Assembly: GCF_023055435.1 (NCBI RefSeq)
Contig: NW_025963784.1
Span: 62,001 to 126,000, forward strand
Source: Haliotis rufescens
Taxonomy: Eukaryota
Direction of reading: 5' to 3'
DNA: 64,000 nucleotides
In this document: positions 3,202-64,000 of the stretch, one piece after another
Numbering within the stretch: the stretch's first letter is position 1
How the letters are laid out: each line of letters starts with the position of its first letter
The notes under the pieces: generated by a model
The model's database searches: none
What the model was told of the DNA's origin: nothing
What the model saw: only the letters and a program-made list of their open reading frames with translations
Made by a program: the position numbers and the translations under genes

Positions 3202-3385
3202 ATGGCGTGTAAAAGTCTGAAACCACCCAGGCCTTACATCACAGGGAGAACATCAGCGCTTAAAGTGGAGGAGATTGTTAACATTCTGAGGAGTCCAGAT
3301 GAGAGCAAGACCATCCAGACTGCCCCCGCCACACCTCAGGGAGGACAGGTGTACCTCTATAAGATAGCATCGGGTATGAGAGAAG
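3202..3385 (+). CDS. Copy 1 coding exon 1: N-terminal half of CG-1-like DNA-binding domain
   Basis: ATG 3202, LKVEEIVNILRS..APATPQGGQVYLY, phase-1 donor G|GTGAGT at 3385/3386; paralogous to 24001-24181. Confidence 0.75.
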
Positions 3386-4522
3386 GTGAGTCAGTTGTGT
3401 TCACGCTTAATGCTAACATGAGGCAGGGATCGATATATAGAAAAAGGTTAATAGTCCATGGAAAACTTATATTATGTATAATATAATTTGAATTCAAAAG
3501 GTTTGTTAAACACACACGATGAATGTCCTCAAAAACCACATGTATATACATGTAGGTTTCCAGTATTTCTCTGCATGACGTGATAATAGATTTTATGTTC
3601 GCTAATATTGTTAACGAGTAACTGCCATGCATAATAAACCTCCAGTGACATCTTCATATTGTTCTCCAAATGGGTTAAATTTCATTAACAAGGATGCTAT
3701 AATGTCACAGAGATATTTTAATTGAAGTTGCGTTTATATTGTAGCATATGCATGTTACTCGCTAGGAGAAGTTACTTTGCAATTTAACAAAACAATTTAA
3801 TGAAATGTAAAATCAAATGACAAATTAAACTTCCGGGGATCGAACACGTAATCTTCGTATCTGCAGCCCAGTGAGTGTATCACTAGGCGACAGAGGCGGT
3901 TAAATGTTTTCAAGAATGTATTTTTCAAGTACCCTTACGCTAGCAACACATATTGTAGGCCCATATTGGCGCCCCTCAGTTTAATCCCTTCGATTCCGGT
4001 CTTAACTCTCATAAAGACCCTCAGACGTGTTTTATCCTACACATAAATCACTGCCAATTCAGCTCAATCGTCCATATCATTATTTCAACTACTAATATAT
4101 TCTGTTTCTGTTCTTCTCTCTCTTTTTATCCCCTTTACAATAACCGTGTACTTTAACGAACATTTATCCAATGTTTACATGTAGGAAGTCAATTGTTCAA
4201 CTGATCAATATAAGCTAAACAAGAATTTGTATTGTTTTAAGGTATGTGGTTTAAGGTATGTGCACCCATATGCCCGATGACATGATATTTATCATTACAA
4301 CCTCTAATACAACATATATGCATGACCTTACAGTTCTATGAGTGTGGTGTGTCCGTTGGCCCATGACAAACAAAGTCGACTTTGCATTTAGGTTTCATTA
4401 ATTAATACCTACACCACACGTGACACACTAACATTCAAAGCTTCTTGACGGACGGTTCATCGTCAGGATAACAACAACGCTTGCAATGTCATGAGACTCA
4501 TGATGTTACATTATATTTACAG

Positions 4523-5592
4523 ACGTGTGGAAGGACGACAAATATCACTTCAGAAGTGATGGAACCCGGAAGCAGCCTAGCTCAAGTCCAGTCATAGTGA
4601 AGCAGTACCACAAGGCTTACACCGAGGACAAGGCAACAACAAGGGCCTTTGTCAGAGAAGCATCGTATCTGTACAACCAGCCTCTGAAACACGTCCTAGT
4701 GCAATATATCGGGGACCACACACAAGCACAGCCTGCTCCTCAACGTAAGAAGCGTGGTCAACAGACAGTTAATTCCCCAGGTTACAGTAAACGTAGAAAA
4801 GTAGAATCAACTGGTGGAGCTGTGCAGTCGGGTGTCACGGAGAACACTAACTCAAACCTGGACCCTGAAGATCATTCATCACCGACAGAATTGGAAGACA
4901 ACGGTAAATCAAACACTATTCTAGGTGTAACATTGAATGAAGCAAAGGTGTCAGAGACTGAAACAAAGAATGATCATGACACAAATCAGAAACGCAGCAG
5001 GACAGGAGATCATAGAGGTGATGATGACATTGAATATTTGGATACAACGTCAGGCTCCCCTGTCAAGAAACTCCGTTTGCAGCCTCAAGTTGACAATGAC
5101 AACACAGTTGTAACCTGTGTCACTAACACACCCTACGCTTATCTGTACACATTTCTAGAAGATGTAGAAAGGAATCGTGATGTGATAAGGGTCGTGCAAC
5201 AGGTTTTATCTTTATCAAGGTTCTGGAACAAGGACTGTACCAACAAAGACAACGCATGCTTGTCACTCATTGAAGAGGTCGACAAGAACTGGAATCTAGA
5301 TGCAATAAAAGCAAGGAACTGGGTTAAATGTTCTGTAAATACTGACGTTCTGAGCTTGAACCAAGACCGGTCAGTTTACATAAACCTCATCGCAGCAGTA
5401 CTTGTTGGAGCATGCCATACCAGGACTGAAGTACAGGACTTTTTGAAAACACTGAAGGATCCTCCTTCACACCCGCAGCATGTACAAGAGGACGTCCCCC
5501 TGTCACGTAACTGTACATACACAGTTGGCTGCTACACCATCAGAGGAGATGTTCTGTCTCGCCTGGAAACCAACGACTGGCTGACAGATGAA
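4523..5592 (+). CDS. Copy 1 coding exon 2: rest of CG-1-like domain, basic NLS-like motifs, start of Ulp1-like domain
   Basis: Acceptor tttacag|AC keeps phase (DVWKDDKYHF..FVREASYL..HVLVQYIGD); ends WLTDE|GTAAGT; 1070 nt, same length as 24944-26013. Confidence 0.8.
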
Positions 5593-6273
5593 GTAAGTAG
5601 TCCATCTGCTCTATTTACACAATCACACAAACTACATGCGTAGTTAATTATCCAAGAAAATCATTTCATAGAGCATGGGAGGCTTTCGATTTCATCAAAT
5701 GATGTCAGTATTAGGTATTAACTGAGGGCGTGAGGGTGGTGAGTGGTTCAGTCACGTAATACTCATTGATAGTGCCTTGATGTAGGCAAGGTAGAGCGTG
5801 AGTTTGGTTAAACGCCTCTTTGAACAGTAGTGTCATGGTGAGTTGGATTAAATTATGAAGAAATTCCAAAGTGAAGCATATCTTAGACGTTTACCACTTT
5901 GTTGATTCCCATGGCGAGTCTGCAAAGCGAAATGCGGCGCCTTGGACCATGAGCCCCCGTCTTAAGATTAATACAGCAACGTTTGACAGTTTCTTCTTTT
6001 TACACCAGTATTAGTTAACCATCAATTAATATAATAGTGCTAATTATCAACTCATTGCCATGCATCTCGATTATGCAATGATAACACTACTCACCTGCAA
6101 TGGGCATTGTGCACAAAATCTAGTACATCATCAGTTCAATTGTCAGTCATTGCTAACAGCCGAGATATTCTCCTCATGATGGATATGTGATGTGCAGCGG
6201 ATCCTGCTTTGATTTGAAATTACAAGCGTTCCCTTTGAACCGAAAGCATTGGGGGATTAAACAGTATAATAAA

Positions 6274-8732
6274 GGGCAAAGATATCATGGATATAGTTAT
6301 AAAGAAGGGAAAACGTAGCATCAATATCATAGGTCCTGAAGGATCAACACCTTTACATTACTCATGTGCAGTTGGAAATGTTAGCATTGTAAGCTACCTG
6401 TTACAGGAATCAGTGGCAATTGGTAATCCAAACAAGAAGGGTGAAACTGGACTTCATTTGGCATGTATATATGGGAATGCAGAAGTTGTTAAAATGTTAT
6501 TACAGAACAAGGGAATAAGTCATGTGACAGAAAATGCTGGCCGCACACCTCTACATGATGCAGCCTGGCAAGGACATAGGGAGGTTGTGGAGGTGTTATT
6601 ACAGAACAAGGCAAATGTGGATGAGAAACGTGATGATGGCAGCACACCTCTACATGATGCAGGCTGGCAGGGACATACGGAGGTTGTGGAGGTGTTATTA
6701 CAGAACAAGGCAAATGTGGATGAGAAACGTAATGATGGCAGCACACCTCTACATGATGCAGCCTACCAGGGTCATAGGGAGGTTGTGAGGGTGATATTAC
6801 AGAACAAGGCAAATGTGGATGAGAAAGATGAGGAAGGCAGCACACCTCTACATGATGCAGCCTGGCAGGGACATCGGGAGGTTGTGGAGGTGTTATTACA
6901 GAACAAGGCAAATGTGGATGACAAACGTGATGATGGCCGCACACCTCTACATGATGCAGCCTGGCAGGGACAGAGGGAGGTTGTGGAGGTGTTATTACAG
7001 AACAAGGCAAATATGGATGACAAACGTGATGATGGCCGCACACCTCTACATGATGCAGCCTGGCAGGGACAGAGGGAGGTTGTGGAGGTGTTATTACAGA
7101 ACAAGGCAAATGTGCATGAGAAAGGTGATGATGGCCGCACACCTCTACATGATGCAGCCAGGATGGGACATCGGGAGGTTGTGGAGGTGTTATTACAGAA
7201 CAAGGCAAATGTGGATGACAAACGTGATGATGGCCACACACCTCTACATGATGCAGCCTGGCAGGGACAGAGGGAGGTTGTGGATCAGTTATTACAGAAC
7301 AAGGCAAATGTGGATGACAAACGTGATGATGGCCACACATCTCTACATCTTGCAGCCTACCGGGGACATAGGGAGGTTGTGGAGGTGTTATTACAGAACA
7401 AGGCAAATGTGGATGACAAACGTGATGATGGCCGCACACCTCTACATGATGCAGCCTGGCAGGGACAGAGGGAGGTTGTGGAGGTGTTATTACAGAACAA
7501 GGCAAATGTGCATGAGAAAGGTGATGATGGCAGCACACCTCTATATGATGCAGCCAGGAAGGGACATCGGGAGGTTGTGGAGGTGTTATTACAGAACATG
7601 GCAAATGTGGATGATAAACGTGATGATGGCCGCACACCTCTATATCTTGCAGCCTACCGGGGACATAGGGAGGTTGTGGAGGTGTTATCACAGAACAAGG
7701 CAAATGTGCATGAGAAAGGTGATGATGGCAGCACACCTCTACATGATGCAGCCAGGAAGGGACATCGGGAGGTTATGGAGGTGTTATTGCAGAACAAGGC
7801 AAATGTGGATGAGAAAGATAAGGAAGGCTGCACATCTCTACATCGTGCATCCTACCAGGGACATAGGGAGGTTGTGGAGGTGTTATTACAGAACAAGGCA
7901 AATGTGGATGACAAACGTGATGATGGCCGCACACCTCTACATCTTGCAGCCTACCGGGGACATAGGGAGGTTGTGGAGGTGTTATTACAGAACAAGGCAA
8001 ATGTGGATGACAAACGTGATGATGACCGCACACCTCTACATGATGCAGTCTGGAAGGGTCATCGGGAGGTTGTGGAGGTGTTATTACAGAACAAGGCAAA
8101 TGTGGATGGTAAACGTGATGATGGCCGCACACCTCTACATGATGCAGCCTGGGAGGGACACAGGGAAGTTGTGGAGGTGTTATTACAGAACAAGGCAAAT
8201 GTGCATGATAAACGTGATAATGGCAGCACACCTCTACATGATGCAGCCAGGAAGGGACATCGGGAGGTTATGGAGGTGTTTTTGCAGAACAAGGCAAATG
8301 TGGATGATAAACGTGATGATGGCCGCACACCTCTACATCTTGCAGCCTACCGGGGACATAGGGAAGTTGTGGAGGTGTTATTACAGAACAAGGCAAATGT
8401 GCATGATAAACGTGATAATGGCAGCACACCTCTACATGATGCAGCCAGGAAGGGACATCGGGAGGTTATGGAGGTGTTTTTGCAGAACAAGGCAAATGTG
8501 GATGATAAACGTGATGATGGCCGCACACCTCTACATCTTGCAGCCTACCGGGGACATAGGGAGGTTGTGGAGGTGTTATTACAGAACAAGGCAAATGTGG
8601 ATGAGAAAGACGATAAAGAAGAAACTGCTTTACAAAAGCAGAGGCACAACATCACGATGATATTGCAAGGATTATAACTGAGGCAACAAATATACATGAC
8701 CTGACAAGCAGCCATAGTACAATTATGGATAG
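6274..8732 (+). pseudogene. Copy 1 ankyrin exon remnant (ORF 6287-8677, about 23 ANK repeats), 5'-deleted and with a terminal frameshift
   Basis: Intron sequence joins mid-exon sequence at 6273/6274 relative to copy 2; TPLHxAAxxGH repeats; A4 vs A5 at 8634-8637 shifts the frame before the AG|GTAAG donor at 8732. Confidence 0.7.
6530..8608 (+). repeat. Coding tandem array, 21 x 99 bp ankyrin units
   Basis: 2079 bp = 21 x 99 with no net indels; near-invariant GAGGTTGTGGAGGTGTTATTACAGAACAAGGCAAATGTG framework. Confidence 0.95.
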
Positions 8733-9754
8733 GTAAGAGCAATATGGAAATGATGCTTGAGTTGACAGCCCAAACACATATATTGTATACGCTGTTTTGC
8801 AGAACAGTTTTGAAACCTCACGAAACCATATGAGACCTCGAAGAGGACAGTACCATCAGACATATATCAAATATCTATTTCAGCTAAAAAAGAATATGGA
8901 CAGAGCATTTCTACAAGGCCCCCGAAACAACATACTAAAAGTCCCAAATCAATCAATCAAATATGTGATGAGAGACCAACAGTGTATTGATATTCCATGT
9001 CTGTCCATGTCTTGGAGGTCATCTTGGATTTTTGGGCCAGTCAGTTAGTGTGACAAGTTTTATGCATATATGTCCCAGCACACTGTTTCAGAGATAAAAG
9101 CTTCCACAGCCTAACCTCATATTTAGGAAATGTGTCGGCCATCTTGAAATTGCCAGCCATCTTGATGTTTTGTAGATTTGTCAATAGTCGAAAACGATCA
9201 ATAGTTGTGAATATCTTTTTAGAAACATAATATGGCTATTTTGCAACACAACACATGCTGTTTTTCATCAAAACATTGAACCTCATCTGAAATAAGGAAA
9301 ATACTATTGACAGATGGTTGCCATATTGGATTATGTAAATTAGACATATTTCCCAAACTGGGATTGCTGGGGACTTTAAGTATGTTGTTTTGGGGACCTT
9401 GTAGAAATGCATTGTGATGAAATGAACTCTATTGCTATTTGTTCCAAGTGTAACCTTATTCTCCATGGGCTACATATGTCAATGGGGACTTTGCCAAAAC
9501 ACTGAAATTATGTTAACCAATATTTGAACTTAATTAGGCTTCACTGTGTATAATATTGAATGATTCGTTGGTTTACGTTTATGAGTATGTGGGGCTTCCA
9601 TTTAGTTTGGAGCCTTTTTCATTAGATACGAATTCGAAAGCGCTGGAGGCTTTTACATCTTGATTTTGTATTATATGTCACAATAGCATCACTATTTTGA
9701 TTAAGTCCTATTTTCTCTGAAATGTTGTGTCAAGTGCATGTGGTATTGTTTCAG

Positions 9755-10211
9755 GGTGACAACCGATGGCCAGTTTCTTATGAAATCATCGTCAGTTCCA
9801 CACGGAAGCTATAACAATGGCGGTTGGCTTACATCCACACCACCAACATCAACGTGTCCCGTGAACCACACATCAGAAGAATTGCCAGGGGTTTATGTTC
9901 CGAGTCAACTGGGACAAGCAGTTTCCACAGACAGACAAAGTGTTATGGAAGAGATCGCCTTGCAGTCATCCCAACCATATCATATAGACGGAAATCTTAA
10001 CAACCTCCTTACAGATCCTGCACACATGGAGATACGTTCACCCAATCAAAGATCAGAAACCATATATGGAATCTCAAGTCATGTTCCCACCTATGTCCAT
10101 GCTCCAGTAGTTGGTGACACATTGCCTAGTTCAGATACCACTAGTAATTCTGAGAATACCATCATTCACTACACTGAGTCTGGGGAAAAGATAGAGCTGC
10201 TGCAGCTCTAA
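9755..10211 (+). CDS. Copy 1 terminal exon (Ser/Thr/Pro-rich tail ending EKIELLQL)
   Basis: Acceptor ttgtttcag|G matches the phase-2 donor at 8732 (AG+G = Arg); ORF 9738-10211; paralog 37765-38122. Confidence 0.6.
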
Positions 10212-10340
10212 AAGTGGTCTAGAAAGGAGTTATCATTGTTATTATGATGTGTCCAATGTTACAGTATACATATACAGTTTTACAACCTCCATTAGGGGTC
10301 AGTCGTCCGAATTCGGTTTGCAGAAAATAACGAGTTATTT

Positions 10341-10500
10341 GTGAAACCCAAGAGCACGCGTATGGTTATGACAAACCTAGAAACATAATCTGAGCGAACC
10401 TGGATTCGAACCCACAATCATAGGTATCTGGTGTACCCAAGGGACGCAACTCTGCACAGCGAATCGCGGCGCCTTAGACGACTGGGCCACCCGTACCCCC
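10341..10500 (-). mobile_element. tRNA-derived SINE (Leu-like head, long A-to-B box spacer), 3'-truncated
   Basis: Reverse complement of 13115-13270: TGGCCCAGTCGTCTAAGGCGCC and GGTTCGAATCC boxes. Confidence 0.7.
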
Positions 10501-11634
10501 GTGGGAGTGATTTGTGTCAATGTAGTTTTGACGTTTCTGTTCGCATCTCGATTCCATGAAAAACTCATTGTACGTTACAAATTCTAGGAACATGGCTAAC
10601 TTTAATGTTTAGAAGATTACATAACAGTTTCTTACAAATGTTTATAACTGGACATATGCAGATTTTAGTGTGTTCCGAACTTTCTTAAAGCAAAGTGTTT
10701 TGTTGAAATTAGTGGGAGTGAGTTCAGATTGACGTACACAATGAATGTTTGCAGCTACATGTCGCTGTGTAAAATATGTACTTGCAGGAACACGTGGGTG
10801 TCTTCTATCATAGTCGGTATTGTCACTTTGATTTGTTTCTGCACCATTTCCAGTGTCAGAGTTGTGAAGTCTCACACCCAATACGAAGCCATGTAACATG
10901 TTGTACATGCAATATAGACTTTAAAGTATGTTCACGGTGACCTCATATTCAGGAATATAATGATTGTTTTATTTCAAAGCAATTTATCCTATTAATTTCC
11001 ATGATGTCTTGGCACACATGAAAATGCTAAGATCAAATAGAATTCTTTGAGCTGTGTCCCTTAAACAAATACAGACTATATAGTCATGGGCAAAACCAAC
11101 CAGTATTACATTCTTCCATGATATCTGACATATTCTTATGTGACATATTATGTGATAGATCACTGAACGAATCCCCGTAAGATATCGTTTTTATTACAAA
11201 CATTGTATCTGAAAACGTATCTAAGGAGCGCAAGATGTTGGAAGCATTATTGTACTAACATTCATGGTTTAAGTAATATACTTTTATCATCAGATAACTC
11301 TTGTTAGTGCTGCATTAGTTAAATGGCCTGTTATGTATTGCCCATAGTTGACCCATTGTTTAACCCCTTTGTGACTGTAGACCTACAATTACGTTTTTCA
11401 ATAGAAGTTGTTTTTTATTCATTTATATTGTATGCTGATTTACTGATTTGGCAATATAGTTTGAACCGTTTTCTAAGTTAACCTTCGCGTGTCAATTCGG
11501 AAATCCCCTCGTAACACTGTGCCATACAGTATAAACATACAGTAACGATTACTGTTAATTTCTAAAATGTCACCAGTGTCATTCATGTGACAAACATATG
11601 AAAATCGTTATGATGTTATGCAGACGTACATATA

Positions 11635-11880
11635 CAGTCGAACCCCGATGTCTTGAACTCGGATGTGCCGATTCCAGGGTCCAGGCGAAATCACAGTCCA
11701 AAATCTTACCATATTTATAGTATTGTTACCTGAATGCTCGACATGAGTGTTTTGAGTTCAATTTATAGTCCCCAAAGTTGAAAGGTAAAACTTATCAAGA
11801 TCCAGGTCGAATTCAAATAGTTCGAATAACTCGAACTATTTCTTTGGTCCCCAGAAGTTCGAGGCAATTGGGTCCGATTG
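11635..11880. mobile_element. Degenerate MITE, Tc1/mariner-pogo-like ends
   Basis: TA-CAGTCGAACCCC at left; imperfect inverted end GGGTCCGATTG at right; subterminal TTCGA motifs. Confidence 0.45.
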
Positions 11881-12399
11881 TTCCTTTATGTTCATATATC
11901 TGAATATGTATACAGGTAGAACAAGGTGCTTATCCAAACGCAGTGAAGTCACACAGACAGCCCATACCAGTGCAGCGTGTATCACAATCAGAACCAATCA
12001 CAAACTATATTCAGGCACTATCCTGATCTAAATATACACTTTCCCTGTGAAAAAGACAAATAAGTGTCTTTGTTGATTATAATCAAATAAAGAAAATACG
12101 CAAAACCAAACCAAAACAAACTGACATTTGAATGAAGTTATCCAGGTTACATGGCATAAATAAGCAGCATGTTTTGCAAGCACAATACATGTGTGATGAT
12201 CAAGTATTTGTAAATACCTTGCTCTGAAATAGAGTGGGCTAGATCGCCTCCATTGTCTTATGGATAGAGTATTAGACCGATTTATTTCGTATGTGTGGCC
12301 TCGAGGCCAATAGTACAATGACATTTTGTTGTAATTCGTCGTGAAGCACCACTTGTATACTGATTAGATTGTAGCTAAATATGGTGTACACAGTTTTAT

Positions 12400-12750
12400 T
12401 TATATTCAATGTATATATTATCCTTCTTTCAAATATCTTATAAACACACACAAGTCTGAGAAGAATATGGCTATTTTTGCTGTTCATTAACTGTACAGAT
12501 TTTCTTTGTGATGGATACGTATAATAATAGTTAGGCAGGTATTTGATTCTTATATCCTCATATACTGGACATATCAATAAAACATGGTATTCATTTTCTT
12601 GGTTATATTTGCAGAAAGGACACGTCGATGTTAAAACATCATTATCTTTGGAGTGTCTGTATAATTGTATATTGAGGGTATGTATACCACACCTGAACTT
12701 CGTTAAGCATCTGCGTAAAGGGAGAGAGTATCTGCCCAGTAACGTTTAAT
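12400..12750 (-). mobile_element. LINE ORF2 3' fragment (C-terminal zinc-knuckle region)
   Basis: Minus-strand translation LTKFRCGIHTLNIQ..CPFCKYNQENEYHVLLICPVYEDIRIKYLP, typical of non-LTR retrotransposon ORF2 ends. Confidence 0.75.
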
Positions 12751-12764
12751 TGTGGTGGTCTTGT

Positions 12765-12980
12765 CACCCCGCCTGGCGCTCAGTATTAAGGGGATAAGAC
12801 TGGTCAATTTGTGGTCAGTATATTGTGTCAGAGTGGGGTAGTAATGTTAAAACTTCGGCATGGTGTATCAGTGGCTTGCTCTGTAAAAACTACATGAGCA
12901 GACACACATACATATACACACACGCGTGCATGCACGTCACCTCATATAAGTGCAATATTCTTGAACGCAACGTTAAACCT
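12765..12980 (+). mobile_element. SINE fragment sharing its central domain with 55375-55628
   Basis: CCCGCCTGGCGCTCAGTATTAAGGGATAAGACTGG..GTCAGTATATTGTGTCAGAGTGGGGTA; duplicated at about 40753-40975. Confidence 0.6.
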
Positions 12981-13114
12981 CAAACCTCATTTTGCCTTGC
13001 CTCACCTCTACAGAGAATGAATCAAATAAGGGCAAAAAATAAAATATGCCTCCTTATTTATGCTTGGCAAACGTGTACTGAATATTGTTTGTGAAGTCAG
13101 GTCTGAAGATTTTC

Positions 13115-13356
13115 GGGGTACGAATGGCCGAGCCGTCTAAGGCGCCGTGATTCGCTGTGCAGAGTTGCGCCCCTTGGGCACGCCAGAGACCTCTAATTGT
13201 GGGTTCGAATCCATGTTCGCCCAGTTTATGTTTCTAGGTTTGTCAGCACCATACCCGTGCTCTTGGGTTTCACCGAAGTGGTAAACGTCTGAGACATTCA
13301 TCACTTGGGCTTTCCTCTCACATTCAGCTGTCACGCCGTGATATAACTGGAATACT
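13115..13356 (+). mobile_element. tRNA-derived SINE (Leu-like head)
   Basis: A box TGGCCGAGCCGTCTAAGG, B box GGTTCGAATCC, tail CGCCGTGATATAACTGGAATA shared with other SINEs here; four copies in the window. Confidence 0.75.
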
Positions 13357-14665
13357 ATCGTAAGCCGTTATAAACATTATCCAGTCTTGTATCCAGTCAA
13401 CAAAGTCAGTTGTAGACAATGCCAGGGATAGAAAAGGTTGAATAATGCATACCACGTTTACGGTAGCTTGTCAAAGGGAGGCAACTCTGTTTTCAGATAT
13501 TATGTTAGCATTTGATACGGAAGTTATTCTGACGAAACTTGGATACTGTGGGTAAAAAGCTGACAGGCGTATTGTCAATAGAGGCATCACCTGTAGTTGT
13601 TCGTACTGGGCTTAAATGACTTTGTGTCTGAATGTGGCAAATGTACGTAATAATGACGAAAGGTATAATGAAATGAAGTGCACTGATGTTTGAACAGCTT
13701 TAAATGTTCTGTTTTGTGTTGAACTCATTTTCCAGAATGGAAATAGTATTTTCCTGTTTTAAATCATACCATGAAGCAAATTTGTTCTTCACCTCATGTA
13801 CATGAAATTTTGATCTTTTGATCACCACAACCATTGTACCTGTAACCTATTGTTCAGGTTGTGAGAAAGGGAGAGAAAACGTATACCCTTACTTGTGCTG
13901 TTTCTAGTGATATAAACAGAGGGACGGTTTGAATATTTGAAACGATGTACAATATGAAGGTTGTATAGCACTGTGATCGAATTACGAATTACGAATACGA
14001 TTACTGACTTGAATAATCAGTTTTTTATTCAATTTAATTAAGACAGTTTGTGAATTTCTGACTAATTTATCATTGCTATCACTGTGAGGTGGAGGTATTT
14101 GAATTCGTCAGAGATGTTTGTATGGATAAGAGCGACAAAACCCTTTACATAATCACAAGAAATCTCTGTTGTAAGCAGACTCCATTTTACGATTCTGACT
14201 TTATTAAAAGCATCACTATCAACTGTCATTATTTCCGGGAGATATTTCACATGTAAAATCGAAATCGTAGCATTCTAAATTCAATAAATATAAAACGTCA
14301 ACGCCAGAGAATAACCAGTCTCGGATATCCACCGAAACACATTCCATTGGGTGTAAAAGGCAACGAGCGGCGAAAACTATGGGAATGGATTATTGATGAC
14401 ACCACGTCTTGTGAAAGTGTACGCATGTCCTGCCCAACCGGTAGGAGCCGCCATTGGTACAATCTGACTCCACGTGTTCTTGGGGTAAACTTGCAAATGC
14501 AGAAAACACAAAGAAACAATGACTTGATAAATATATAGATTTCCCAAACATGATGACTGATTATATGCAATATCTCTGAACAAGCTAAAGGTATGACGGT
14601 AGCCATTTTAGAAATCATAAAAACACAGTTTCATTTCTTGTAATATTTCTCCGACCGAGTTGCAA

Positions 14666-15582
14666 TTACACTGACAAGGAGGACCGCAGCTGCAGGATGT
14701 TGAGAATGTCCTCCCATTCGATCGTGCATCTCTCTTTACATGTCCAGAGTACTTTGACCAGGACCAGATAGGTGGCCGAACTGCCATTCCACTGCTTCCA
14801 TTAAGTGAGCATAATCAAGACCTGCATATACATTGAACATGGGTGTGCAACTTTGCCATGTTGGATAGCCACAATGCTGAGCCCAAGTTCAATCCCGACA
14901 TGCTCAAAGCCGATCCCGATATGTCTCGCAACAAGTCCGAGATCTTGTGGAGTTACAGGAGTCTTCAGTCTCTCGTTCACACGACGTGTTGAACCTACAC
15001 ACAAATCTGTATTACTTGACGTAACGCCAAAATCACCACATATAAACAGGTTCTGTTTATTGTTTGATTGATATGTGATATCGAATTAACGTATCTCAAA
15101 TACTGATCGATAATCATCATTACAAAATGACAGAAAAAGAAACTGTGTATATCCTCTGATATACGTTTATGTCGTCAAAATAATGACCACAAAGTTTATA
15201 GTAATACTGAACAAATGGGATATATAACCAAATTTCTGAAATTAAATTTTTCAAATTGAGACGTTCAATGTCTTACACAATTATCTTTTTAAAATGGGAA
15301 TTTAACGCACCTCTCCCTATGTTCTGATGGATGCAATACTCGATCAGCTCGTTGTTCGACTGGTGCATTCTCTAGAACGAAAAGCACACAATATCACGTT
15401 GGTCAATAGCTCTGTTACTGTATATCCACTATTAAGCATACAAAATGCACTAAGCTGAGGATTGAATTCTGTGTACATGTTATATTACTGCTAGCTTAAG
15501 TGTATAAACATCTTCATAGAAGAAAGTTATTAAGACGTACCTGATACTGAAGTCCTGAGAAGCACGAGACTAGATTCCCCAT
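14666..15582 (-). pseudogene. Acylated death-domain-only gene, type A, with nonsense mutation (exons 15582-15541, 15371-15311, 14994-14666)
   Basis: MGNLVSCFSGLQYQ / RMHQSNNELIEYCIHQNIGR / GSTRRVNERL..; GT-AG sites and phases 0/1 fit; TAA at 14803-14801 where the paralog has AAA (TKW). Confidence 0.8.
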
Positions 15583-15680
15583 GTTGTCTGTATCTAACTT
15601 TATATGACGCCGAAGTGCACTACTCTGTTTGTTGAACCTACCTGACTGAATCAAGACCTCTCAGCTACATGTGAGCAATA

Positions 15681-15691
15681 GGGGAATCCCC
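15681..15691. promoter_or_regulatory. NF-kB/Rel-type site GGGGAATCCCC
   Basis: Matches GGGRNNYYCC; 99 bp upstream of the DD ATG at 15582; position conserved in paralogs. Confidence 0.65.
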
Positions 15692-17934: not shown

Positions 17935-18281
17935 TTACCCAGACGTAGATGCTGGTGACAGCAGGATGTTGAGAATGTCCTCCCACTCAATGGTACAGCT
18001 GTCATTGCATCTCCACAATGCTCTGACAAGGACCAGTCCTGTGGCAGATCTTCCGTTTTTCTCCTTCCACTTGGTAAGCATGTGTACAACTTGCATATAT
18101 AGTGAACATGGATGTGCAAAAGTCACTTGTTCGATAACCACGAGAGTAAGTCCAAGTTCGATGCCAACAGACTCGAACCCGATCCCGATGTGACTTGCAA
18201 CAAGGCTGAGATCTCGTCCAGATACAGGAGTATCCAACATCTCGTCATTTACAGCATATGCTTGGTTCGGGTGTCTTGGCC
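17935..18281 (-). pseudogene. Death-domain exon, type B, orphaned by deletion of exons 1-2 and promoter
   Basis: Open 347-nt exon paralogous to 52152-52498; at about 18340 the sequence jumps from the equivalent of about 52556 to about 53530. Confidence 0.7.
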
Positions 18282-46958: not shown

Positions 46959-46992
46959 TTTATACATGCATGACTGATGGGAGGGGACTCCC
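46959..46992 (-). promoter_or_regulatory. TATA-like box plus kB site GGGGACTCCC (46983-46992)
   Basis: Same layout as the other DD promoters. Confidence 0.6.
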
Positions 46993-48744: not shown

Positions 48745-48779
<35 letters not shown>

Positions 48780-48997
48780 ACACACGCATACACGCACACA
48801 CACACGCACACGCACACGCACACACGCACGTGCGCACGCACGTACACACACACACAGAAATAAAGACAGACTGTATAAGACCATGCAACCACAAACGCGC
48901 ACATTGACATGCAAACAATGAGCTCGTTAGTTTCTAATAATTAAAGTTCACCTACCCGATACCTAAATCCAGACCAGCATGACACATAATTCCCCAT
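47991..48997 (-). CDS. Acylated death-domain-only protein, type C, 138 aa (exons 48997-48956, 48660-48600, 48304-47991)
   Basis: MGNYVSCWSGFRYR / RLHQPHNQMIRSYNPLVTLT / GPVNEERLRIPVSQKGVSLVANHIGIGFESIGIELGL..MLTKWKERNGRSAT; phases 0/1 fit. Confidence 0.85.
48748..48856. repeat. (CA)n/(CACG)n microsatellite in intron 1 of the type C gene
   Basis: Visible directly. Confidence 0.95.
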
Positions 48998-49061
48998 TGT
49001 CGGCTCTGTACATACGTTTTACCCTCGGCTTTACTGATCTGCTGTCCGTTCAATCGCTTGC

Positions 49062-49094
49062 TATTTATATGTAGGCTTTGTGAAGGGGATTTCA
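49062..49094 (-). promoter_or_regulatory. TATA box (TATAAATA on -) plus kB-like GGGGATTTCA (49085-49094)
   Basis: 65-97 bp upstream of the ATG at 48997. Confidence 0.55.
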
Positions 49095-49284
49095 CTAAAT
49101 TTGTCGACAATAATTTCTGTTGCAGAAAACCAAAACCGCCGAGTTTTTATTGACGGGCGTTTATTGAAGCAAAACGCATGCTATACATCATAAATCCGAA
49201 AATCCGACTTGTTGTACATTTACTTCACAATGTCAACTAGTTGGCGGAAACGTCTTTAGGCTGTGTGTGTGTGTGTGTTCTTTG

Positions 49285-52151: not shown

Positions 52152-53297
52152 TTACACAGACACAGTGGACGGTCCCTGAAGGATGTTGAGAATGTCCTCC
52201 CACTCAATGGTACACCTGTCATTGCATCTCCACAGTGCTCTGACAAGGACAAGGATGGTTGCAGTTCTCCCGTTCTTCTCCTTCCACTTTGTAAGCATGT
52301 GCACAACTTGCATGTATAGTGAATAAGGGTGTGCAAACGTGACTTGTTCGATAACCACGAGAGTAAGTCCAAGTTCGATGCCAACAGACTCGAACCCGAT
52401 CCCGATGTGACTTGCAACAAGACTGAGATCTCTTCCAGATACTGGAGTATCCAACATCTCGTCATTTACAGCATATGCTTGGTTCCAGTGTGTTGGCCCT
52501 ACAACATTAAACTCACAATAAACTACCAATAGACTTGTGTACATTTTGTTTGATAGATGATGTAACAACATTCGGTTCGCTTTCATTAATCCAAATTATT
52601 TCACTAAACAAAGAAAAATACGATACATACATACAGTAATTTAAAAAGAAATTAATGGGGTACACATAGAACTAAACTTCCTAAAATAGAATTATAAGAC
52701 AAACAGATTGTTTAAATAAAGAACTAAAGGATGACTATGCTTGTCATAAGAGGCGACCAGCGGGATCGGGTGGTCAGGCTCGCTGACATGGTTGATGCAT
52801 GTTATTGTATCCCAATTGCGTAAATCGATACTCATGATGTCAATCAGTGGATTGTCTGGTCCAGATTCGATTATTTACAGACCACCGTCATATAGCTGGA
52901 ATATTGCTGCGTGCGACGTTAAACAAAAAACAAGCAAACCAAATAACAAACAATGTAATTTAACGTACATGTAACTCTCTCTGTCAGATTGGGTTCATTT
53001 TGGCAGTTTATCGAGTTCTCTGTGTTGGACAGCCTCTGGAATCGAATAAACACAGTTTAAAACACGATTGATAGCTACGCCATCACAGCAATAAAACAAT
53101 AAAGATAATCTTACATAAACTAAACAAGACAATGCAATGCCAAATTCACGTGAACATGTACACACGCATTACACATATTGACACGCTAAAGTTCGAATAG
53201 GGAAAGCATGTGAAATATGCCTATATACATATGTATACATAACATCTTGACCCACCTGATATCGGGATATTGGCCAGCATGAAACAATATTACCCAT
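52152..53297 (-). CDS. Acylated death-domain-only protein, type B, 151 aa (exons 53297-53256, 53035-52969, 52498-52152)
   Basis: MGNIVSCWPISRYQ / RLSNTENSINCQNEPNLTERVT / WPTHWNQAYAVNDEMLDTPVSGRDLSLVASHIG..; open frame, GT-AG sites. Confidence 0.82.
52730..52950 (+). mobile_element. 5'-truncated SINE in DD intron 2 (duplicate 63618-63840; related fragments about 50863-51030 and 61533-61700)
   Basis: GACTATGCTTGTC(A/G)TAAGAGGCGAC..CCGTCATATAGCTGGAATATTGCTG plus (AAAC)n tail. Confidence 0.7.
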
Positions 53298-53383
53298 GCT
53301 GTCTGTAATTATGCCTCTACTTCACACATGTGTATCCCACAGCCAGCTGACACAATCTGATAGTTTCGACTGTACTGACGGGC

Positions 53384-53415
53384 TTTATATATCGGACTAG
53401 CATAAGGGGATTCCC
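53384..53415 (-). promoter_or_regulatory. TATA box (TATATAAA on -) plus kB site GGGGATTCCC (53406-53415)
   Basis: Perfect kB consensus 109 bp upstream of the ATG at 53297. Confidence 0.7.
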
Positions 53416-60266: not shown

Positions 60267-60330
<64 letters not shown>

Positions 60331-60849: not shown

Positions 60850-60891
60850 CCGATACCCAAATCCGGACCAGCAGGAGACATAATTCCCCAT
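60850..60891 (-). pseudogene. Orphan type C first exon MGNYVSCWSGFGYR, with TATA and kB-like GGGGATTTAC (60977-60986)
   Basis: Duplicate of 48956-48997; downstream exons are replaced by the 1.3-kb repeat in this assembly. Confidence 0.6.
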
Positions 60892-63036
60892 TGTCGGCTC
60901 TGTACATACGTTTTACCCTCTGCTGTGGAGATCTGCTGTCCGTTCAATCGCTCGCTATTTATGAAGGCTTTGTGAAGGGGATTTACCTTCAAACTTCAAA
61001 CATTTCATGAAGATTTTTCTGCAGAATGTTTCCTTCGCAAAAAATAAATTTGAAAAGGACCACATTGTATTATATCCAGGAAATACTCAATGGGAAAAAA
61101 TTACGAGTTGAATGGGCTTGAAAACATGTAGAGGTACAGATCTAGAAGAGGGAACAATAGTGGTGGTGTGGATTGGCATACTGGGGAAATGATACAATAA
61201 TGTTGTTAACCAAATTAAGCTGTGTCGTCATGTAAGTGAGCACCAACACACTTGAAGGTTGTCCTTTTCAATAGTACACAATATAAGATGAACACAAAAA
61301 GGTGAGTAAGTCAGTTCGCATTGAGAGCTCAATGGGATATAACAACATAGCGATTGGCTTAAATTCAATCAAGGTTCGGCATCATAGGCCTGATCAAGGC
61401 ATTCCAGAAATAGGAAATTAGGTAGATTTTTTTACGAAATATGACATGCTGCCTTTGAAAGTTATTTTCAATTCTATCCCATACTATGACCTTTACAGGG
61501 AGATTTCACACCTCCTCACTCCCTTACTTAAATGGATCGGGTGGTCATGCTTGGTGACTTGGTTGACAGCGTGGCGTAGTAACCCGACGACGTGAATCAT
61601 TGCTCATGATAGTGATCCCTGGATTCTTTGGCCGATACTTTACAGGCCACCGTGATATGTCAGGAGTATTGCTGGTGGCGGCATTTTGCAACAACAAATA
61701 GCTTTTATTAAATTTGTGAGAGTGGCGGTTGCTTCTGGTAGAGCATTACATGCTAATCATTCTGTGGATTACCTGGTGTCATCGCTGATTTTCATTGATT
61801 CATTCATTTACTTCTCATCACTATTTTGATCTTTTCCATGCATAAAGAAAGTGACAGTAATTCAAGCTTCTTTATAATTGAGATCATTACTTGTAATTGT
61901 GTCATTCGAATTCTTTATCAAGCTAGTTGTAGAATCTAAAAGGGTATATTATTGAATACATAAAATCGGATTTTCGAAACAACTAGAATTTTTACCACTA
62001 CAAATCTGTTGCAATGGTGCATAGATATGAGTGCAGTCACAACTTTATTTACGCATGTTTCGTCATAACGCCAATCTTTTCCGCTATCCCTTTGCAGTCA
62101 GCATGCAAAAGCTTTCACATATTATCCTACGATAGTTGTCTAAATGTTTTATGGTAAAAGTGTAGAGGACTGGTTAGGATAATCATTTCCCTGTCTGTGA
62201 CGGGTGCCAGTGGGACAGGATACCTTTTCGCAAACTTCTGGTATCATCTCTATTTGATTTCATACCTGAGAACCACTACAGCCCATCACCAGTATTTGCA
62301 AACTTCAAACCAGGAAATATTCTTACAAATAGAATACAGCTACTATAGAAAGTAAAACAAAAATTGTCGTCCATAATCAATCAGCAAGATTCTACGACCG
62401 GCAAACCCTTGTGAAATTGTTCCAAATAAGAGACAACAGATAAACAGCTCATTTGGAACAACATAACACAAATATTTTGACTGTTCAATCGTGACGGGAC
62501 ACTGTAAAATCAAATCATATTGTGAGACGCAATTATGTCTCCGGATTTTCGGATTACGGATCACGTTTAGGGTGCATGTAATCATCCCTCGCTAGTTCTT
62601 CCTCAAATATCACAAGAGACAGAAAGACAAGTTATTACAAAAGGCATCACAGCTATTTATTAAAAGCATTTATTCTCAACACATACAAATAGAATCACAC
62701 TGTATTACAAACGGAAAAGATATTAATGTTCAAATGAAGAGTGTTCAGTGTGCAACTTGAGGATACAGAAATCATTCAGGTCAGTCAGGATCCCAAATTA
62801 TCTACATAAGCCTCAGTGAACCTAGCATCTCGACTCGATATTTCAAAGCGGGAACCCAATCAATCAATGATAACTGTACATGAGAAGAGTGTTCGCTCGT
62901 ACGAGAGAACATAAATGTAGACATGATTTCTCTGTATGTTGTCGGGGAAACTCAGTGAAGCATTACTTATATACCCACTCGTGTATTCACAGCGTAAAGC
63001 AACACAGCGTCAGGTGAAAACAGCTCTCCGACTTGA

Positions 63037-63934
63037 TTACACGGATACAGTGGACGGTCCCTGAAGGATGTTGAGAATGTCCTCCCACGCAATGGTACAC
63101 CTGTCATTGCAACTCCACAGTGCTCTGACAAGGACCAGGCTGGTTGCAGTTCTCCCGTTCTTCTCCTTCCACTTTGTAAGCATGTGTACAACTTGCATGT
63201 ATAGTGAACATGGATGTGCGAAAGTCACTTGTTCGATAACCACTAGAGTAAGTCCAAGTTCGATGCCAACAGACTCGAACCCGATCCCGATGTGACTTGC
63301 AACAAGGCTGAGATCTCGTCCAGATACAGGAATATCCAGCATCTCTTCATTTACAGCATATGCTTGGTTCGGGTGTCTTGGCCCTACAACATTAAACTCA
63401 CAATAAACTACCTATTTACTTGTGTACATTTGTTTGATAGATTATGTTACAACATTCGGTTCACATTCATTATACCAAATTAGCTTTATCAAACAAAAAG
63501 GTATGGTACATACATAAAGTAACGTAAACAGAAATCATTTGGTACACATAGAACTAAACTTCCTGAAAGACAAGCAGATTGTTTAAATTCAATAAAACTA
63601 AAACATCAAACTAAAAGGCGACTATGCTTGTCGTAGGAGGCGACTAACAGGATCGGGTGGTAAGGCTCGCTAACATGTTTGTTGCATGTCATCGTATCCC
63701 AATTGCGTAGATCGATACTCCTGATGTTAATCGCTGGATTGTCTGGTCCAGACTCGATTATTTAAAGATCGCCGTCATATAGCTGGAATATTGCTGAGTG
63801 CGACATTAAACAACAAACAAACAAAAAAACAAGCAAACAAAATAGCGAACAATGTAATGTAACGTACTTGTAACTCTCTCTGTCAGATTGGGTTCATTTT
63901 GGCAGTTTATCGAGTTCTCTGAGTTGGACAGTCT
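63037..63934 (-). CDS. Death-domain-only protein, type B, exons 2-3 (63934-63868, 63383-63037); exon 1 expected beyond the window
   Basis: Open frame; paralogous to 52152-53035 with the same splice sites. Confidence 0.8.
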
Positions 63935-64000
63935 CTGGAATCGAATAAACACAGTTTCAAACACAATTGATACCTACACCATCATAGCACTAAACTAATA

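What the first reader, a model, noticed from the sequence alone, without database searches (positions are those of the whole stretch)
3202..64000. Candidate innate-immune module: a variable ANK-protease gene co-duplicated with NF-kB-driven acylated death-domain-only genes
Seen: the recognisable host genes are all of these two types; each ANK gene is followed convergently by a type A DD gene, and the pair was duplicated together; both types show rapid gain and loss. Known: death domains, Rel sites, STAND-ANK receptors and deSUMOylating/deubiquitinating proteases all act in innate signalling. Inference: a linked sensor/regulator plus membrane adaptor-or-decoy cluster that I do not recognise as described. 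Linkage alone does not show joint function.
Basis: partly seen in the sequence, partly recalled or inferred. Interest (0 to 1): 0.8.

Follow-up and report, generated by a model that had tools for sequence, protein, structure and literature searches.

The report
Abalone death-domain / protease-ankyrin gene array
This stretch of red abalone DNA is part of a long tandem array. In it, a giant protease-ankyrin gene has been copied again and again together with small death-domain genes that are probably membrane-anchored and carry NF-kB-type promoter sites. It looks like an undescribed abalone-specific immune or cell-death locus, but its function is untested.

Summary

**What is in the window (Haliotis rufescens, C6:62001-126000)**
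- There are two about 90% identical duplication units.
- Each unit has a CG-1-like / Ulp1(C48) / helical / ankyrin-array gene on the + strand.
- Each is followed by small three-exon genes on the - strand that encode MGNxxSC-tailed, death-domain-only proteins.

**Genome-wide**
- The same unit repeats over at least 340 kb of chromosome scaffold C594. It also fills redundant scaffolds C6 and C72.
- Related death-domain exons lie beside three of five old, 22-35% identical protease-ankyrin paralogs. The linkage therefore predates the array.
- A kB-like decamer sits 12-20 nt upstream of a TATA-like box in all six promoters in the window. About 70% of roughly 90 such promoters genome-wide carry a perfect decamer.
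- The death domain is real: its predicted fold is closest to RAIDD, and dN/dS is 0.12-0.26.

- Unit A is decaying. Its ankyrin gene has lost the protease core and helical region and has a frameshift. Its type-A death-domain gene has a stop.
- Gene B has a premature stop.
- No STAND NTPase is present.

**Not shown**
NF-kB control, acylation, immune induction and joint function remain inferences. No paper found describes the locus. Earlier agents of this scan reached the same reading on other windows of this genome.

The parts
3184..15768 (.). Duplication unit A, a decaying copy that holds ankyrin gene A and DD-A1
   Evidence: Self-BLAST shows 83-92% identity to 23982-44195. dS between the units is about 0.04-0.12.
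23982..44195 (.). Duplication unit B, which holds ankyrin-protease gene B and DD-A2
   Evidence: Self-BLAST.
3202..10211 (+). Gene A. It keeps the CG-1-like exons (3202-3384 and ~4522-5592) joined to a 21-repeat ankyrin exon (~6271-8732) and a tail exon (to 10211). The rest of the C48 domain, including its catalytic residues, and the helical region are deleted, and there is a 1-nt deletion near 8633. It is probably a pseudogene.
24001..38122 (+). Gene B: CG-1-like domain, basic linker, C48 protease, helical region of about 400 aa, and about 69 ankyrin repeats (66 of them regular 33-mers). A premature TAA at 36608-36610 cuts off the C-terminal tail.
   Evidence: The exon order matches RefSeq model P0006. 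A spliced RNA-type contig joins the giant exon to 37763.
27323..28138 (+). C48 catalytic exons: a His motif (QHWVLLV...VVNS) and a Gln/Cys motif (QSDGHSCGIFV)
   Evidence: Pfam PF02902 E 1.4e-5 on the exon. His, Gln and Cys are kept and Asn sits at the Asp position in all four paralogs aligned.
28682..29900 (+). Helical region of unknown fold, with no NTPase motif
   Evidence: No Pfam or NCBIfam hit. Only Haliotis relatives among 1.84 billion representatives. AF2 pLDDT is 41.
29990..36607 (+). Ankyrin array. The scaffold is near-invariant and variability is confined to positions 1, 3, 8, 11, 12, 29, 32 and 33 of the 33-mer.
   Evidence: 63 of the 66 repeats are distinct.
14669..15691 (-). DD-A1, a type-A death-domain gene with an in-frame stop at 14801-14803. 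Its promoter has the kB-like site GGGGATTCCCC at 15681-15691.
17938..18282 (-). DD-B1, a remnant that keeps only the death-domain exon. Exons 1-2 and the promoter are lost.
22253..22445 (-). Type-A-like death-domain fragment 1.5 kb upstream of gene B
42882..44114 (-). DD-A2, intact. Exons are 44007-43966 (MGNIASCFSRLQYQ), 43616-43556 and 43207-42882. The kB-like site is at 44105-44114.
   Evidence: One contig from run X2 ends at the exon-3 acceptor, which is weak support.
46846..46992 (-). Orphan first exon (MGNIRSC...) with a kB-like site at 46983-46992. No death-domain exon follows.
47994..49095 (-). DD-C, intact. Exons are 48997-48956, 48666-48598 and 48317-47994. The kB-like site at 49085-49095 has one mismatch.
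   Evidence: It is 93% identical to H. cracherodii P0004.
52152..53415 (-). DD-B2, intact. Exons are 53297-53256 (MGNIVSCWPISRYQ), 53035-52969 and 52498-52152. A TATA box lies near 53390 and GGGAATCCCC at 53406-53415.
60850..60987 (-). Orphan first exon (MGNYVSC...) with a one-mismatch kB-like site. It abuts a tandem-repeat block and a gap.
63040..63384 (-). DD-B3 death-domain exon. Its first exon lies beyond the end of the window.

Best explanation
The window is a slice of an abalone-specific tandem array that evolves by birth and death of copies. The array holds two long-linked gene families, which most likely act in innate-immune or cell-death signalling.

**Death-domain family.**
- The small genes encode proteins of about 130-150 aa.
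- Each has a disordered N-terminal tail starting MGNxxSC. I predict this tail is N-myristoylated and palmitoylated, which would tether the protein to membranes.
- Each has one RAIDD/PIDD/ankyrin-type death domain and no effector domain.
- Their TATA promoters carry a Rel/NF-kB-type decamer.
- They are probably inducible, membrane-tethered adaptors or decoys that nucleate or block death-domain oligomers.

**Protease-ankyrin family.**
- The giant genes encode a CG-1 DNA-binding-type domain, a basic linker, a clan-CE (Ulp1/SENP-like) cysteine protease and a helical region.
- These are followed by 20-70 ankyrin repeats whose binding-surface residues vary.
- I read this as a probable nuclear binder or regulator that removes a ubiquitin-like modifier.

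**Amplification.** Unequal crossing-over copies whole units. Copies then decay, as unit A has here.

**Shown:** gene structures, domains, co-amplification, old linkage, motif conservation, purifying selection on the death domain, and transcription with splicing of the ankyrin-protease family.

**Inferred:** acylation, NF-kB control, immune role, and any coupling between the two proteins.
For: **Array**
- At least 46 matches to the helical region, 62 to the N-terminal exon and at least 150 death-domain exons were found.
- Almost all lie on C594:41.59-41.92 Mb, C6 and C72. The ankyrin genes are all on + and the death-domain genes all on -.
- On C594, a type-A first exon follows seven of the nine ankyrin genes. 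A type-A-like death-domain exon follows the other two.

**Old linkage**
- The closest non-array relatives of the family's death domain lie 9-38 kb upstream of distant paralogs a (C594:5.33 Mb), d (C594:21.86 Mb) and e (C27:178 kb).
- These three paralogs have the same CG-1/C48/ankyrin architecture.
- Three of four independent loci fall in about 0.04% of the genome.

**Death domain**
- Pfam Death scores 24.8-27.2 bits against a cut-off of 22.6.
- PDB sequence hits include the ankyrin-3 death domain (5e-7) and CRADD (3e-5).
- AF2 gives pLDDT above 90 over residues 45-145, showing six helices.
- Foldseek's best match is the RAIDD death domain, with TM 0.88 and rmsd 1.7.
- dN/dS is 0.12-0.26 with dS above 1 between types.

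**Promoter**
- The kB-like decamer is aligned upstream of a TATA-like box in 6 of 6 promoters, although mean column identity is only 55%.
- The window has 18 consensus hits against 5.0 expected.
- Genome-wide, the composite 'kB decamer, 85-115 nt, MGN exon' has 65 hits and 0 in the control. The exon pattern alone has 94 hits.

**N-terminus.** MGN... starts also occur in H. cracherodii and H. rubra RefSeq models.

**Protease.** C48 scores E 8e-11 to 4e-17. His, Gln and Cys are conserved in paralogs as low as about 38% identical.

**Ankyrin.** Variability falls on the positions randomised in DARPins (the mapping is from my own knowledge).

**RNA.** A contig from run X5 is spliced into 37763.
Against: - No expression level or induction data could be obtained. 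Only assembled contigs were available.
- No consensus kB site lies upstream of the ankyrin-protease genes, so nothing predicts co-regulation.
- The orientation of the death-domain genes relative to the ankyrin gene differs among the old loci.
- Paralogs b and c showed no neighbouring death-domain exon. However, their immediate flanks could not be fetched.
- Many copies are pseudogenes, including both ankyrin genes here.
- The ankyrin-protease has no death domain, so no obvious interaction surface exists for the small proteins.
- One outlying subfamily (L023) starts MNPF..., not MG. A distant paralog starts MGD, which is a poor N-myristoyltransferase context.
- Block duplication alone can produce linked paralogs.
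Confidence: 0.45

Rival explanations
1. The linkage is historical only. An ancestral block that happened to hold both genes was duplicated, first to other chromosomes and later in tandem. Under this reading the two families work independently. The death-domain proteins act in death-domain signalling. The CG-1/C48/ankyrin protein is an unrelated nuclear SUMO-protease-like regulator.
For: - Tandem and segmental duplication co-copies whatever lies in the unit.
- Orientation is not conserved at the old loci.
- The two families have different promoter content.
- The large protein has no death domain.
- Two of five old paralogs and the C1 and C445 death-domain clusters show no partner in the DNA I could see.
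Against: - The neighbourhood is retained at three loci whose proteins have diverged to 22-35% identity.
- Nearly every close relative of that death-domain subtype sits beside an ankyrin-protease paralog.
- Both observations are more than random microsynteny would be expected to give.
Confidence: 0.3
2. The array is a transposon-derived or selfishly amplifying gene cluster. Under this reading the CG-1/C48 module was domesticated from a DNA transposon protein. The array expands by unequal exchange with little benefit to the organism. Most copies are decaying.
For: - Ulp1 domains are carried by Ginger1 and Mutator transposases in animals (PMC2836005).
- An earlier scan note (s1-810260) proposes a Mutator-like origin.
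- Pseudogenes are frequent.
- dN/dS is 0.4-0.6 on the ankyrin-protease.
- The family is confined to Haliotis in the searches made.
Against: - There is no transposase, integrase or terminal repeat around the units.
- The genes have multiple exons and are spliced.
- The catalytic residues and the architecture are conserved in old paralogs.
- The death-domain genes are under clear purifying selection.
Confidence: 0.12
3. The scale of the array is partly an assembly artefact. Haplotigs and collapsed or duplicated repeats would inflate copy numbers and create some of the apparent truncations.
For: - The first 130 kb or so of C6 share a constant coordinate offset with C594:41662507 onward.
- C72 repeats the 3' end of C6, and C6 repeats itself at an offset of about 589.6 kb.
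- The window has two N gaps and a 99%-identical 1301-bp tandem block.
Against: - C594 alone holds 8-9 ankyrin-protease genes and about 30 death-domain exons, which differ from one another by 2-35%.
- Units A and B differ by about 10%.
- H. cracherodii has both families on one 41.9-Mb contig.
Confidence: 0.08

Closest known systems
RAIDD/CRADD and PIDD death domains (PIDDosome), and the ankyrin-G/B C-terminal death domain
   Same: The small proteins share the six-helix death-domain fold. RAIDD is the best structural match (TM 0.88) and the ankyrin-3 and CRADD death domains are the best sequence matches. NCBI names some members 'CRADD-like'.
   Different: They have no CARD, so they are not CRADD orthologues. 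True molluscan CRADD has both CARD and death domain (PMC11463336). The tail is a short, disordered MGNxxSC stretch. There are dozens of tandem copies, and the promoters carry a kB-like site next to a TATA box.
Ulp1/SENP clan-CE proteases, including Ulp1 domains carried by Ginger1 and Mutator transposases
   Same: The Pfam C48 domain is present with conserved His, Gln and Cys.
   Different: It is fused to a CG-1 domain and to 20-70 ankyrin repeats. Asn sits where Ulp1 has the catalytic Asp. That register comes from my own memory of the Ulp1 sequence. No transposase is attached.
CAMTA transcription factors (CG-1, TIG, ankyrin, IQ)
   Same: There is an N-terminal CG-1 domain, above Pfam's threshold in paralog P0018, together with ankyrin repeats in the same protein.
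   Different: No TIG or IQ domain is found. A C48 protease and a helical region are inserted. The ankyrin array is enormous and variable. The family is tandemly amplified and restricted to abalone.
Lineage-specific immune gene clusters and linked gene pairs, such as plant NLR pairs and expanded death-domain or NLR repertoires of sea urchin, amphioxus and bivalves (from general knowledge)
   Same: It shows tandem birth-and-death evolution, a variable repeat surface, death-fold signalling domains, and linkage of two different families.
   Different: There is no NTPase switch, TIR or LRR domain. The large partner looks nuclear and proteolytic. No immune phenotype or induction is known.
Lipid-anchored signalling adaptors, such as myristoylated TRAM/TICAM2 and dual-acylated Src-family N-termini (from general knowledge)
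   Same: The protein starts Met-Gly, with Ser at position 6 and an adjacent Cys, ahead of a small protein-interaction domain.
   Different: The interaction domain is a death domain rather than a TIR or kinase domain. Acylation is only predicted.

Membership tests
Death domain (Pfam PF00531, death-fold superfamily) | Profile match above the curated threshold | tested here: met
   Four of the five window ORFs score 24.8-27.2 bits against a cut-off of 22.6. Type A scores 20.7 bits, just below it.
Death domain (Pfam PF00531, death-fold superfamily) | Six-helix bundle fold | tested here: met
   AF2 gives pLDDT above 90 over residues 45-145, with six helices. The top 17 Foldseek hits are all death domains, and RAIDD gives TM 0.88.
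CRADD/RAIDD | N-terminal CARD plus C-terminal death domain | tested here: not met
   Pfam finds only Death. The N-terminal 36-45 residues are disordered and far too short for a CARD.
Ulp1/SENP peptidase C48 (clan CE) | C48 profile match above threshold | tested here: met
   P0006 scores 42.6 bits, P0010 63.2, P0018 44.3 and the window exon 25.5, against a cut-off of 20.7.
Ulp1/SENP peptidase C48 (clan CE) | Catalytic His-Asp-Cys triad plus oxyanion Gln | tested here: inconclusive
   His, Gln and Cys are conserved in all four paralogs. The residue 17 positions after His is Asn, not Asp, in all four. The register against Ulp1 comes from memory, and activity is untested.
CAMTA | CG-1 domain | tested here: inconclusive
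   P0018 scores 30.9 bits, above the 23.5 cut-off. P0017 scores 23.0, P0006 19.7 and the window exons 13.2 bits. The domain is real in the family but diverged in this subfamily.
CAMTA | TIG/IPT domain and IQ motifs | tested here: not met
   Pfam finds no such hits in P0006, P0010, P0017 or P0018.
STAND/NLR receptors | P-loop NTPase (NACHT or NB-ARC) between the effector and repeat domains | tested here: not met
   Pfam and NCBIfam find nothing in the helical region. I saw no Walker A motif on reading it. The language-model lead to fungal winged-helix-plus-ankyrin clusters is weak (0.89-0.90). The AF2 model is unusable.
NF-kB/Rel target promoter | GGGRNNYYCC decamer at a conserved position near the core promoter | tested here: met
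   Four sites are perfect and two have one mismatch in the six aligned promoters. Genome-wide there are 65 composite hits against 0 in the control.
NF-kB/Rel target promoter | Rel binding and Rel-dependent induction | not testable with these tools
   No raw RNA-seq from challenged animals could be laid on the region.
N-myristoylated / palmitoylated proteins | Met-Gly start, permissive residue 3, Ser/Thr at 6, nearby Cys | tested here: met
   MGN[ILYN]xSC is encoded by about 89 first exons (Ser and Cys were fixed by the search pattern). RefSeq models of two other species also start MGN, though the spacing of Ser and Cys varies. The actual lipidation was not tested.

The most novel reading that the evidence does not exclude
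The two families form a genuine two-component system unique to abalone. The hypervariable ankyrin arrays would recognise pathogen or danger ligands. The linked, NF-kB-inducible, membrane-anchored death-domain proteins would transmit or gate the resulting cell-death or inflammatory signal. Each tandem unit would co-evolve as a matched sensor-adaptor pair. This would be a receptor-diversification strategy that uses neither an NTPase switch nor LRRs.
Probability: 0.15. Interest if true: 0.85.

Novelty: new variant of a known kind. Interest (0 to 1): 0.6.

Why it matters
Abalone are farmed and endangered animals hit by withering syndrome, vibriosis and herpesvirus, and their immune repertoire is poorly known.

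This locus has many features typical of an immune or conflict locus:
- Dozens of death-domain-only genes under purifying selection.
- A conserved Rel-type promoter site in those genes.
- Persistent linkage to a giant protein with a variable binding surface and a ubiquitin-like protease.

If it is functional, it would add a new kind of death-domain signalling module, membrane-tethered and without any effector domain. It would also add the first non-CAMTA use of a CG-1 domain that I found any record of.

The array is also a clear case of co-amplification and co-decay of a multi-gene unit. It can be tested directly with existing abalone challenge experiments.

Tried and rejected
- **STAND reading rejected.** No NTPase domain was found.
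- **AF2 of the helical region** gave pLDDT 41, so I made no fold search on it. Its first 61 or so residues were intron read-through, which I recognised only afterwards by comparison with P0006.
- **ESM Atlas look-ups** gave only weak leads.
- **PDB sequence search with single C48 exons** gave nothing. One call failed on stop codons.
- **NCBIfam** found nothing.
- **Literature.** No paper describes the locus, a CG-1+Ulp1+ankyrin protein, or these abalone death-domain genes.
The immediate flanks of paralogs a-e and the C1 locus were therefore not read. Linkage at a, d and e rests on search coordinates.
- **RNA evidence.** The runs were assembled contigs of uncertain type and cannot give expression levels.
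- **No joined-exon protein of the window was built or searched.** I searched exons by reference and used RefSeq models of relatives for the full architecture.
- The N gaps were left as they are.

Full report
**Source and setting.** The window is eukaryotic and has introns. Protein hits and contig lengths identify it as Haliotis rufescens (red abalone). The window is C6:62001-126000. H. rufescens RefSeq proteins P0007, P0017 and P0002 sit on a 1,025,956-bp contig. P0005 and P0010 sit on a 54,236,743-bp contig, which is the length of C594.

The assembly is redundant here. Hits on the first 130 kb or so of C6 keep a constant offset to C594:41662507 onward. C72 repeats the 3' end of C6. C6 also repeats itself at an offset of about 589.6 kb. 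Copy numbers from C6 and C72 are therefore upper bounds, and I rely mainly on C594.

**Checking the observation.** Self-BLAST shows unit A (3184-15768) matching unit B (23982-44195) at 83-92% identity. Each unit has one large + strand gene.

For gene B the open frames and the H. cracherodii RefSeq model P0006 (2079 aa) give this exon order:
- A CG-1-like first exon (24001-24180).
- A 357-codon exon carrying the rest of that domain, a basic linker and the start of the protease (24943-26013).
- Four short C48 exons (26681-26812, 27323-27481, 28022-28138, 28240-~28566).
- A giant exon (~28682-~36741) with a helical region of about 400 aa and the ankyrin array.
- A tail exon (37763-38122).

Pfam supports ankyrin repeats and Peptidase_C48, both on the 65-aa exon alone (E 1.4e-5) and on P0006 (E 8e-11). 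CG-1 is weak on the window exons (E 0.07) and on P0006 (E 7e-4, covering 108 of 116 profile positions). It is above Pfam's threshold in paralog P0018, which is 38% identical (30.9 bits), so the domain is real in the family.

An alignment of four paralogs shows the His motif, the Gln and the Cys conserved. An Asn sits 17 residues after the His in all of them. From my memory of Ulp1, that is the position of the catalytic Asp. The triad may therefore be His-Asn-Cys. I did not test activity.

The linker has basic runs (QRKKRG, KCRKV, VKKPRL; read directly) that look like nuclear localisation signals.

**The helical region is not a STAND module.**
- Pfam and NCBIfam find nothing in it.
- A HMMER search of 1.84 billion representatives finds four proteins, all from Haliotis.
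- The AF2 model is unusable (pLDDT 41).
- A language-model lead to fungal winged-helix-plus-ankyrin clusters is weak.

**Ankyrin array.** Gene B has 66 regular 33-residue repeats, of which 63 are distinct. Gene A has 21. Entropy is concentrated at positions 1, 3, 8, 11, 12, 29, 32 and 33 of my register. Most of these map to the beta-turn and first-helix positions randomised in designed ankyrin binders (mapping from my own knowledge). The scaffold is nearly invariant.

**Death-domain genes.** All lie on the - strand. tblastn with Haliotis RefSeq proteins and direct reading give nine loci:

| Locus | Coordinates | State |
|---|---|---|
| DD-A1 | 15582..14669 | In-frame stop at 14801-14803 |
| DD-B1 | 18282-17938 | Only the death-domain exon survives |
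| Fragment | 22445-22253 | Type-A-like fragment |
| DD-A2 | 44007-43966, 43616-43556, 43207-42882 | Intact |
| Orphan exon 1 | 46887 | No death-domain exon follows |
| DD-C | 48997-48956, 48666-48598, 48317-47994 | Intact |
| DD-B2 | 53297-53256, 53035-52969, 52498-52152 | Intact |
| Orphan exon 1 | 60891 | Abuts repeat block and gap |
| DD-B3 | 63384-63040 | Exon 1 is off the window |

Evidence that the domain is a real death domain:
- Pfam Death scores 24.8-27.2 bits (cut-off 22.6) for types B and C, and 20.7 for type A.
- The closest solved sequences are the death domains of ankyrin-3 (5e-7), CRADD (3e-5) and PIDD.
- An AF2 model built from 11 family members is confident over residues 45-145. 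It has six helices and a disordered N-terminal 36 residues.
- Foldseek ranks the RAIDD death domain first (TM 0.88, rmsd 1.7 A), followed by PIDD, ankyrin-G, RIPK1, TRADD and FADD.

There is no CARD, so the automatic name 'CRADD-like' refers only to the death domain. True molluscan CRADD has CARD plus death domain (PMC11463336).

dN/dS on the death-domain exon is 0.12-0.26, with dS above 1 between types A, B and C. The types are therefore old and constrained. The A1/A2 pair gives 1.6, as expected if A1 is decaying.

**Acylation motif and promoter.** The six first exons in the window encode MGN[ILY]xSC... and end at a GT donor. RefSeq models from H. cracherodii and H. rubra also start MGN. Genome-wide, the pattern ATGGGNAATNNNNNNTCNTGCT has 94 hits against 3 in the reversed control, and about 89 of them lie in the array or at C605. 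The pattern fixes Ser6 and Cys7, so it counts such exons rather than testing their conservation.

Aligning the six promoters (55% mean column identity) puts a kB-like element at one position, 12-20 nt upstream of a TATA-like box. Four copies match GGGRNNYYCC exactly: 15681-15691, 44105-44114, 46983-46992 and 53406-53415. Two have one mismatch: 49085-49095 and 60977-60987. The window has 18 consensus hits against 5.0 +/- 3.2 expected, although palindromes and a tandem repeat inflate that count.

Genome-wide, the composite 'perfect decamer, 85-115 nt, MGN exon' occurs 65 times and never in the control. It occurs across four promoter types whose decamers differ in the degenerate centre but keep the GGG...CC flanks. 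This is a good phylogenetic footprint for a Rel-type site, but binding and induction remain untested. No consensus site lies upstream of either ankyrin-protease gene.

**Scale of the array.** In the whole genome:
- The helical region has 46 matches.
- The N-terminal exon has 62 matches.

Almost all lie on C594:41.59-41.92 Mb, C6 and C72. The large genes are always on + and the small genes always on -.

On C594 alone there are 8-9 large genes at spacings of 30-50 kb and about 30 death-domain exons. A type-A first exon follows seven of the nine large genes (41632433, 41684324, 41740068, 41768529, 41802707, 41833745, 41865486). A type-A-like death-domain exon follows the other two (41713429, 41897880). 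Many copies carry stops.

**Linkage is older than the array.** Five distant paralogs, 22-35% identical, have the same CG-1/C48/helical/ankyrin layout (P0010). They lie at C594:5.31-5.33 Mb (a), C24:35.96-35.97 Mb (b), C545:33-52 kb (c), C594:21.88-21.89 Mb (d) and C27:136-165 kb (e).

In the flanks I fetched, related death-domain exons appeared upstream of a and d. A whole-genome search with the exon beside a then showed where its ten closest non-array relatives lie:
- Two at a (5336614, 5338161).
- Five at d (21840572-21862049).
- One at e (C27:178335).
- Two at C1:67.02 Mb, whose neighbourhood I could not read.

Three of four independent loci thus fall within about 40 kb of an ankyrin-protease paralog. 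Those neighbourhoods make up about 0.04% of the genome, so the association is not chance.

It could still reflect duplication of an ancestral block rather than selection for linkage. The orientation of the small genes differs among the three loci. A separate death-domain cluster at C445:17.67-17.74 Mb showed no ankyrin-protease in the two 10-kb windows I held.

**State of the copies in this window.** Gene A lacks the 3075 bp corresponding to B 26650-29724. That removes the rest of the C48 domain, including its catalytic residues, and most of the helical region. Gene A also has a 1-nt deletion near 8633 that shifts the frame before the donor.

Its type-A partner has a stop, DD-B1 has lost its 5' half, and a further fragment follows. 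The whole of unit A is decaying together.

Gene B has a TAA at 36608-36610, about 44 codons before the donor. Its tail exon is frame-shifted relative to gene A and P0006. At best it encodes a protein without the C-terminal tail.

**Assembly gaps.** Gap 49285-49462 lies 288 bp upstream of the DD-C start codon, beside a (TG)n run. The sequence to its right (49466-49820) is co-linear with the paralogous promoter region at 60992-61353.

Gap 57603-57750 is followed by a 1301-bp unit repeated 2.3 times at 99% identity (57751-60694). This block ends 156 bp from the orphan first exon (60850-60891). Neither gap lies in an exon. I did not try to fill them. I cannot say whether the missing exons of the 60891 gene are a real loss.

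**Expression.** Only assembled contigs of uncertain library type were available. One contig of run X5 carries 30 letters that match the end of the giant exon with one mismatch. It is joined exactly at 37763, so the ankyrin-protease family is transcribed and spliced. One contig of run X2 covers DD-A2 exon 3 and stops within 2 nt of the acceptor, with 46 unaligned letters beyond. This is weak evidence of a spliced death-domain transcript. Nothing can be said about expression levels or induction.

**Distribution and literature.** Searches with the death-domain exon, the helical region and the first 640 residues of P0006 return only H. rufescens, H. cracherodii and H. rubra proteins.

Six literature searches found no description of the locus or of a CG-1+Ulp1+ankyrin protein. 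Ulp1 domains are known on Ginger1 and Mutator transposases of animals (PMC2836005). A transposon origin of the protease module is therefore possible but untested here.

**Earlier notes of this scan.** After my own, I read notes on other windows of this genome. Follow-up agents had reached the same reading: an array of at least 340 kb, pairing at three older loci, and a CG-1/Ulp1/ankyrin architecture. These are not independent evidence, but my tests agree with them.

**Verdict.** The sequence hallmarks fit an immune or cell-death locus, and the old linkage hints at joint function. The STAND element is wrong, the large protein looks nuclear, and no functional link or induction has been shown.

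I rate it a new variant of a known kind, namely a lineage-specific, tandemly expanded death-fold and repeat-protein locus. Interest is 0.6.

Noticed in passing
window 57751-60694: A 1301-bp unit is repeated 2.3 times at 99% identity directly after the N gap. It carries kB-like decamers (GGGGAACTCC, GGGAGTTTCC) in each copy. It could be a satellite, a young duplication or an assembly artefact.
   Followed up: partly
window 38408-38686 and 41107-41385: These two stretches form an inverted repeat pair at 89% identity. They bracket about 2.4 kb of intergenic DNA. Both arms have contig depths of 10^4-10^5 in all four runs laid, so this is a very high-copy SINE- or MITE-like element. It is also present in unit A.
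   Followed up: no
window 15740-15775, 44150-44190, 47040-47070 (- strand): Several death-domain promoters have runs of AAATCCG/GAAATCC heptads just upstream of the kB-like site. These may be extra half-sites or sites for another factor.
   Followed up: no
L023:9299-10000 (C594:41924299-41925000), L029:7142-8272, protein P0018: A second subfamily has CG-1 + C48 + ankyrin with no helical region and is 32-38% identical. It sits at the edge of the array, in several places inside C6, and at C594:21.37 Mb. Its CG-1 domain passes Pfam's threshold.
   Followed up: partly
L023:4583-5330: A 65%-identical death-domain gene at the array's edge keeps the kB-like site (GGAAGCCCCC) and TATAAAT. However, its first exon reads MNPFNPTH..., with no Met-Gly start.
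   Followed up: partly
G000:C445:17669617-17742846: A separate cluster of five more distant death-domain exons (23-39% identical) lies here. No ankyrin-protease homology appeared in the two 10-kb windows I fetched.
   Followed up: partly
G000 C6, C72 and C594:41.66-41.79 Mb: The assembly is redundant. C6 duplicates part of C594, C72 duplicates the end of C6, and C6 repeats itself at an offset of about 589.6 kb. These are likely haplotigs, so copy counts in this region are inflated.
   Followed up: partly
L030:7707-8765 (- strand): A 353-aa open frame looks like a Tc1/mariner-type transposase (helix-turn-helix followed by a DDE-like region, judged by eye). It lies next to an N-terminal-domain paralog at C594:13.23 Mb.
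   Followed up: no
window 48615-48921: A long (CA)n/(TG)n microsatellite lies in intron 1 of DD-C. A second (TG)n run borders the gap at 49285.
   Followed up: no
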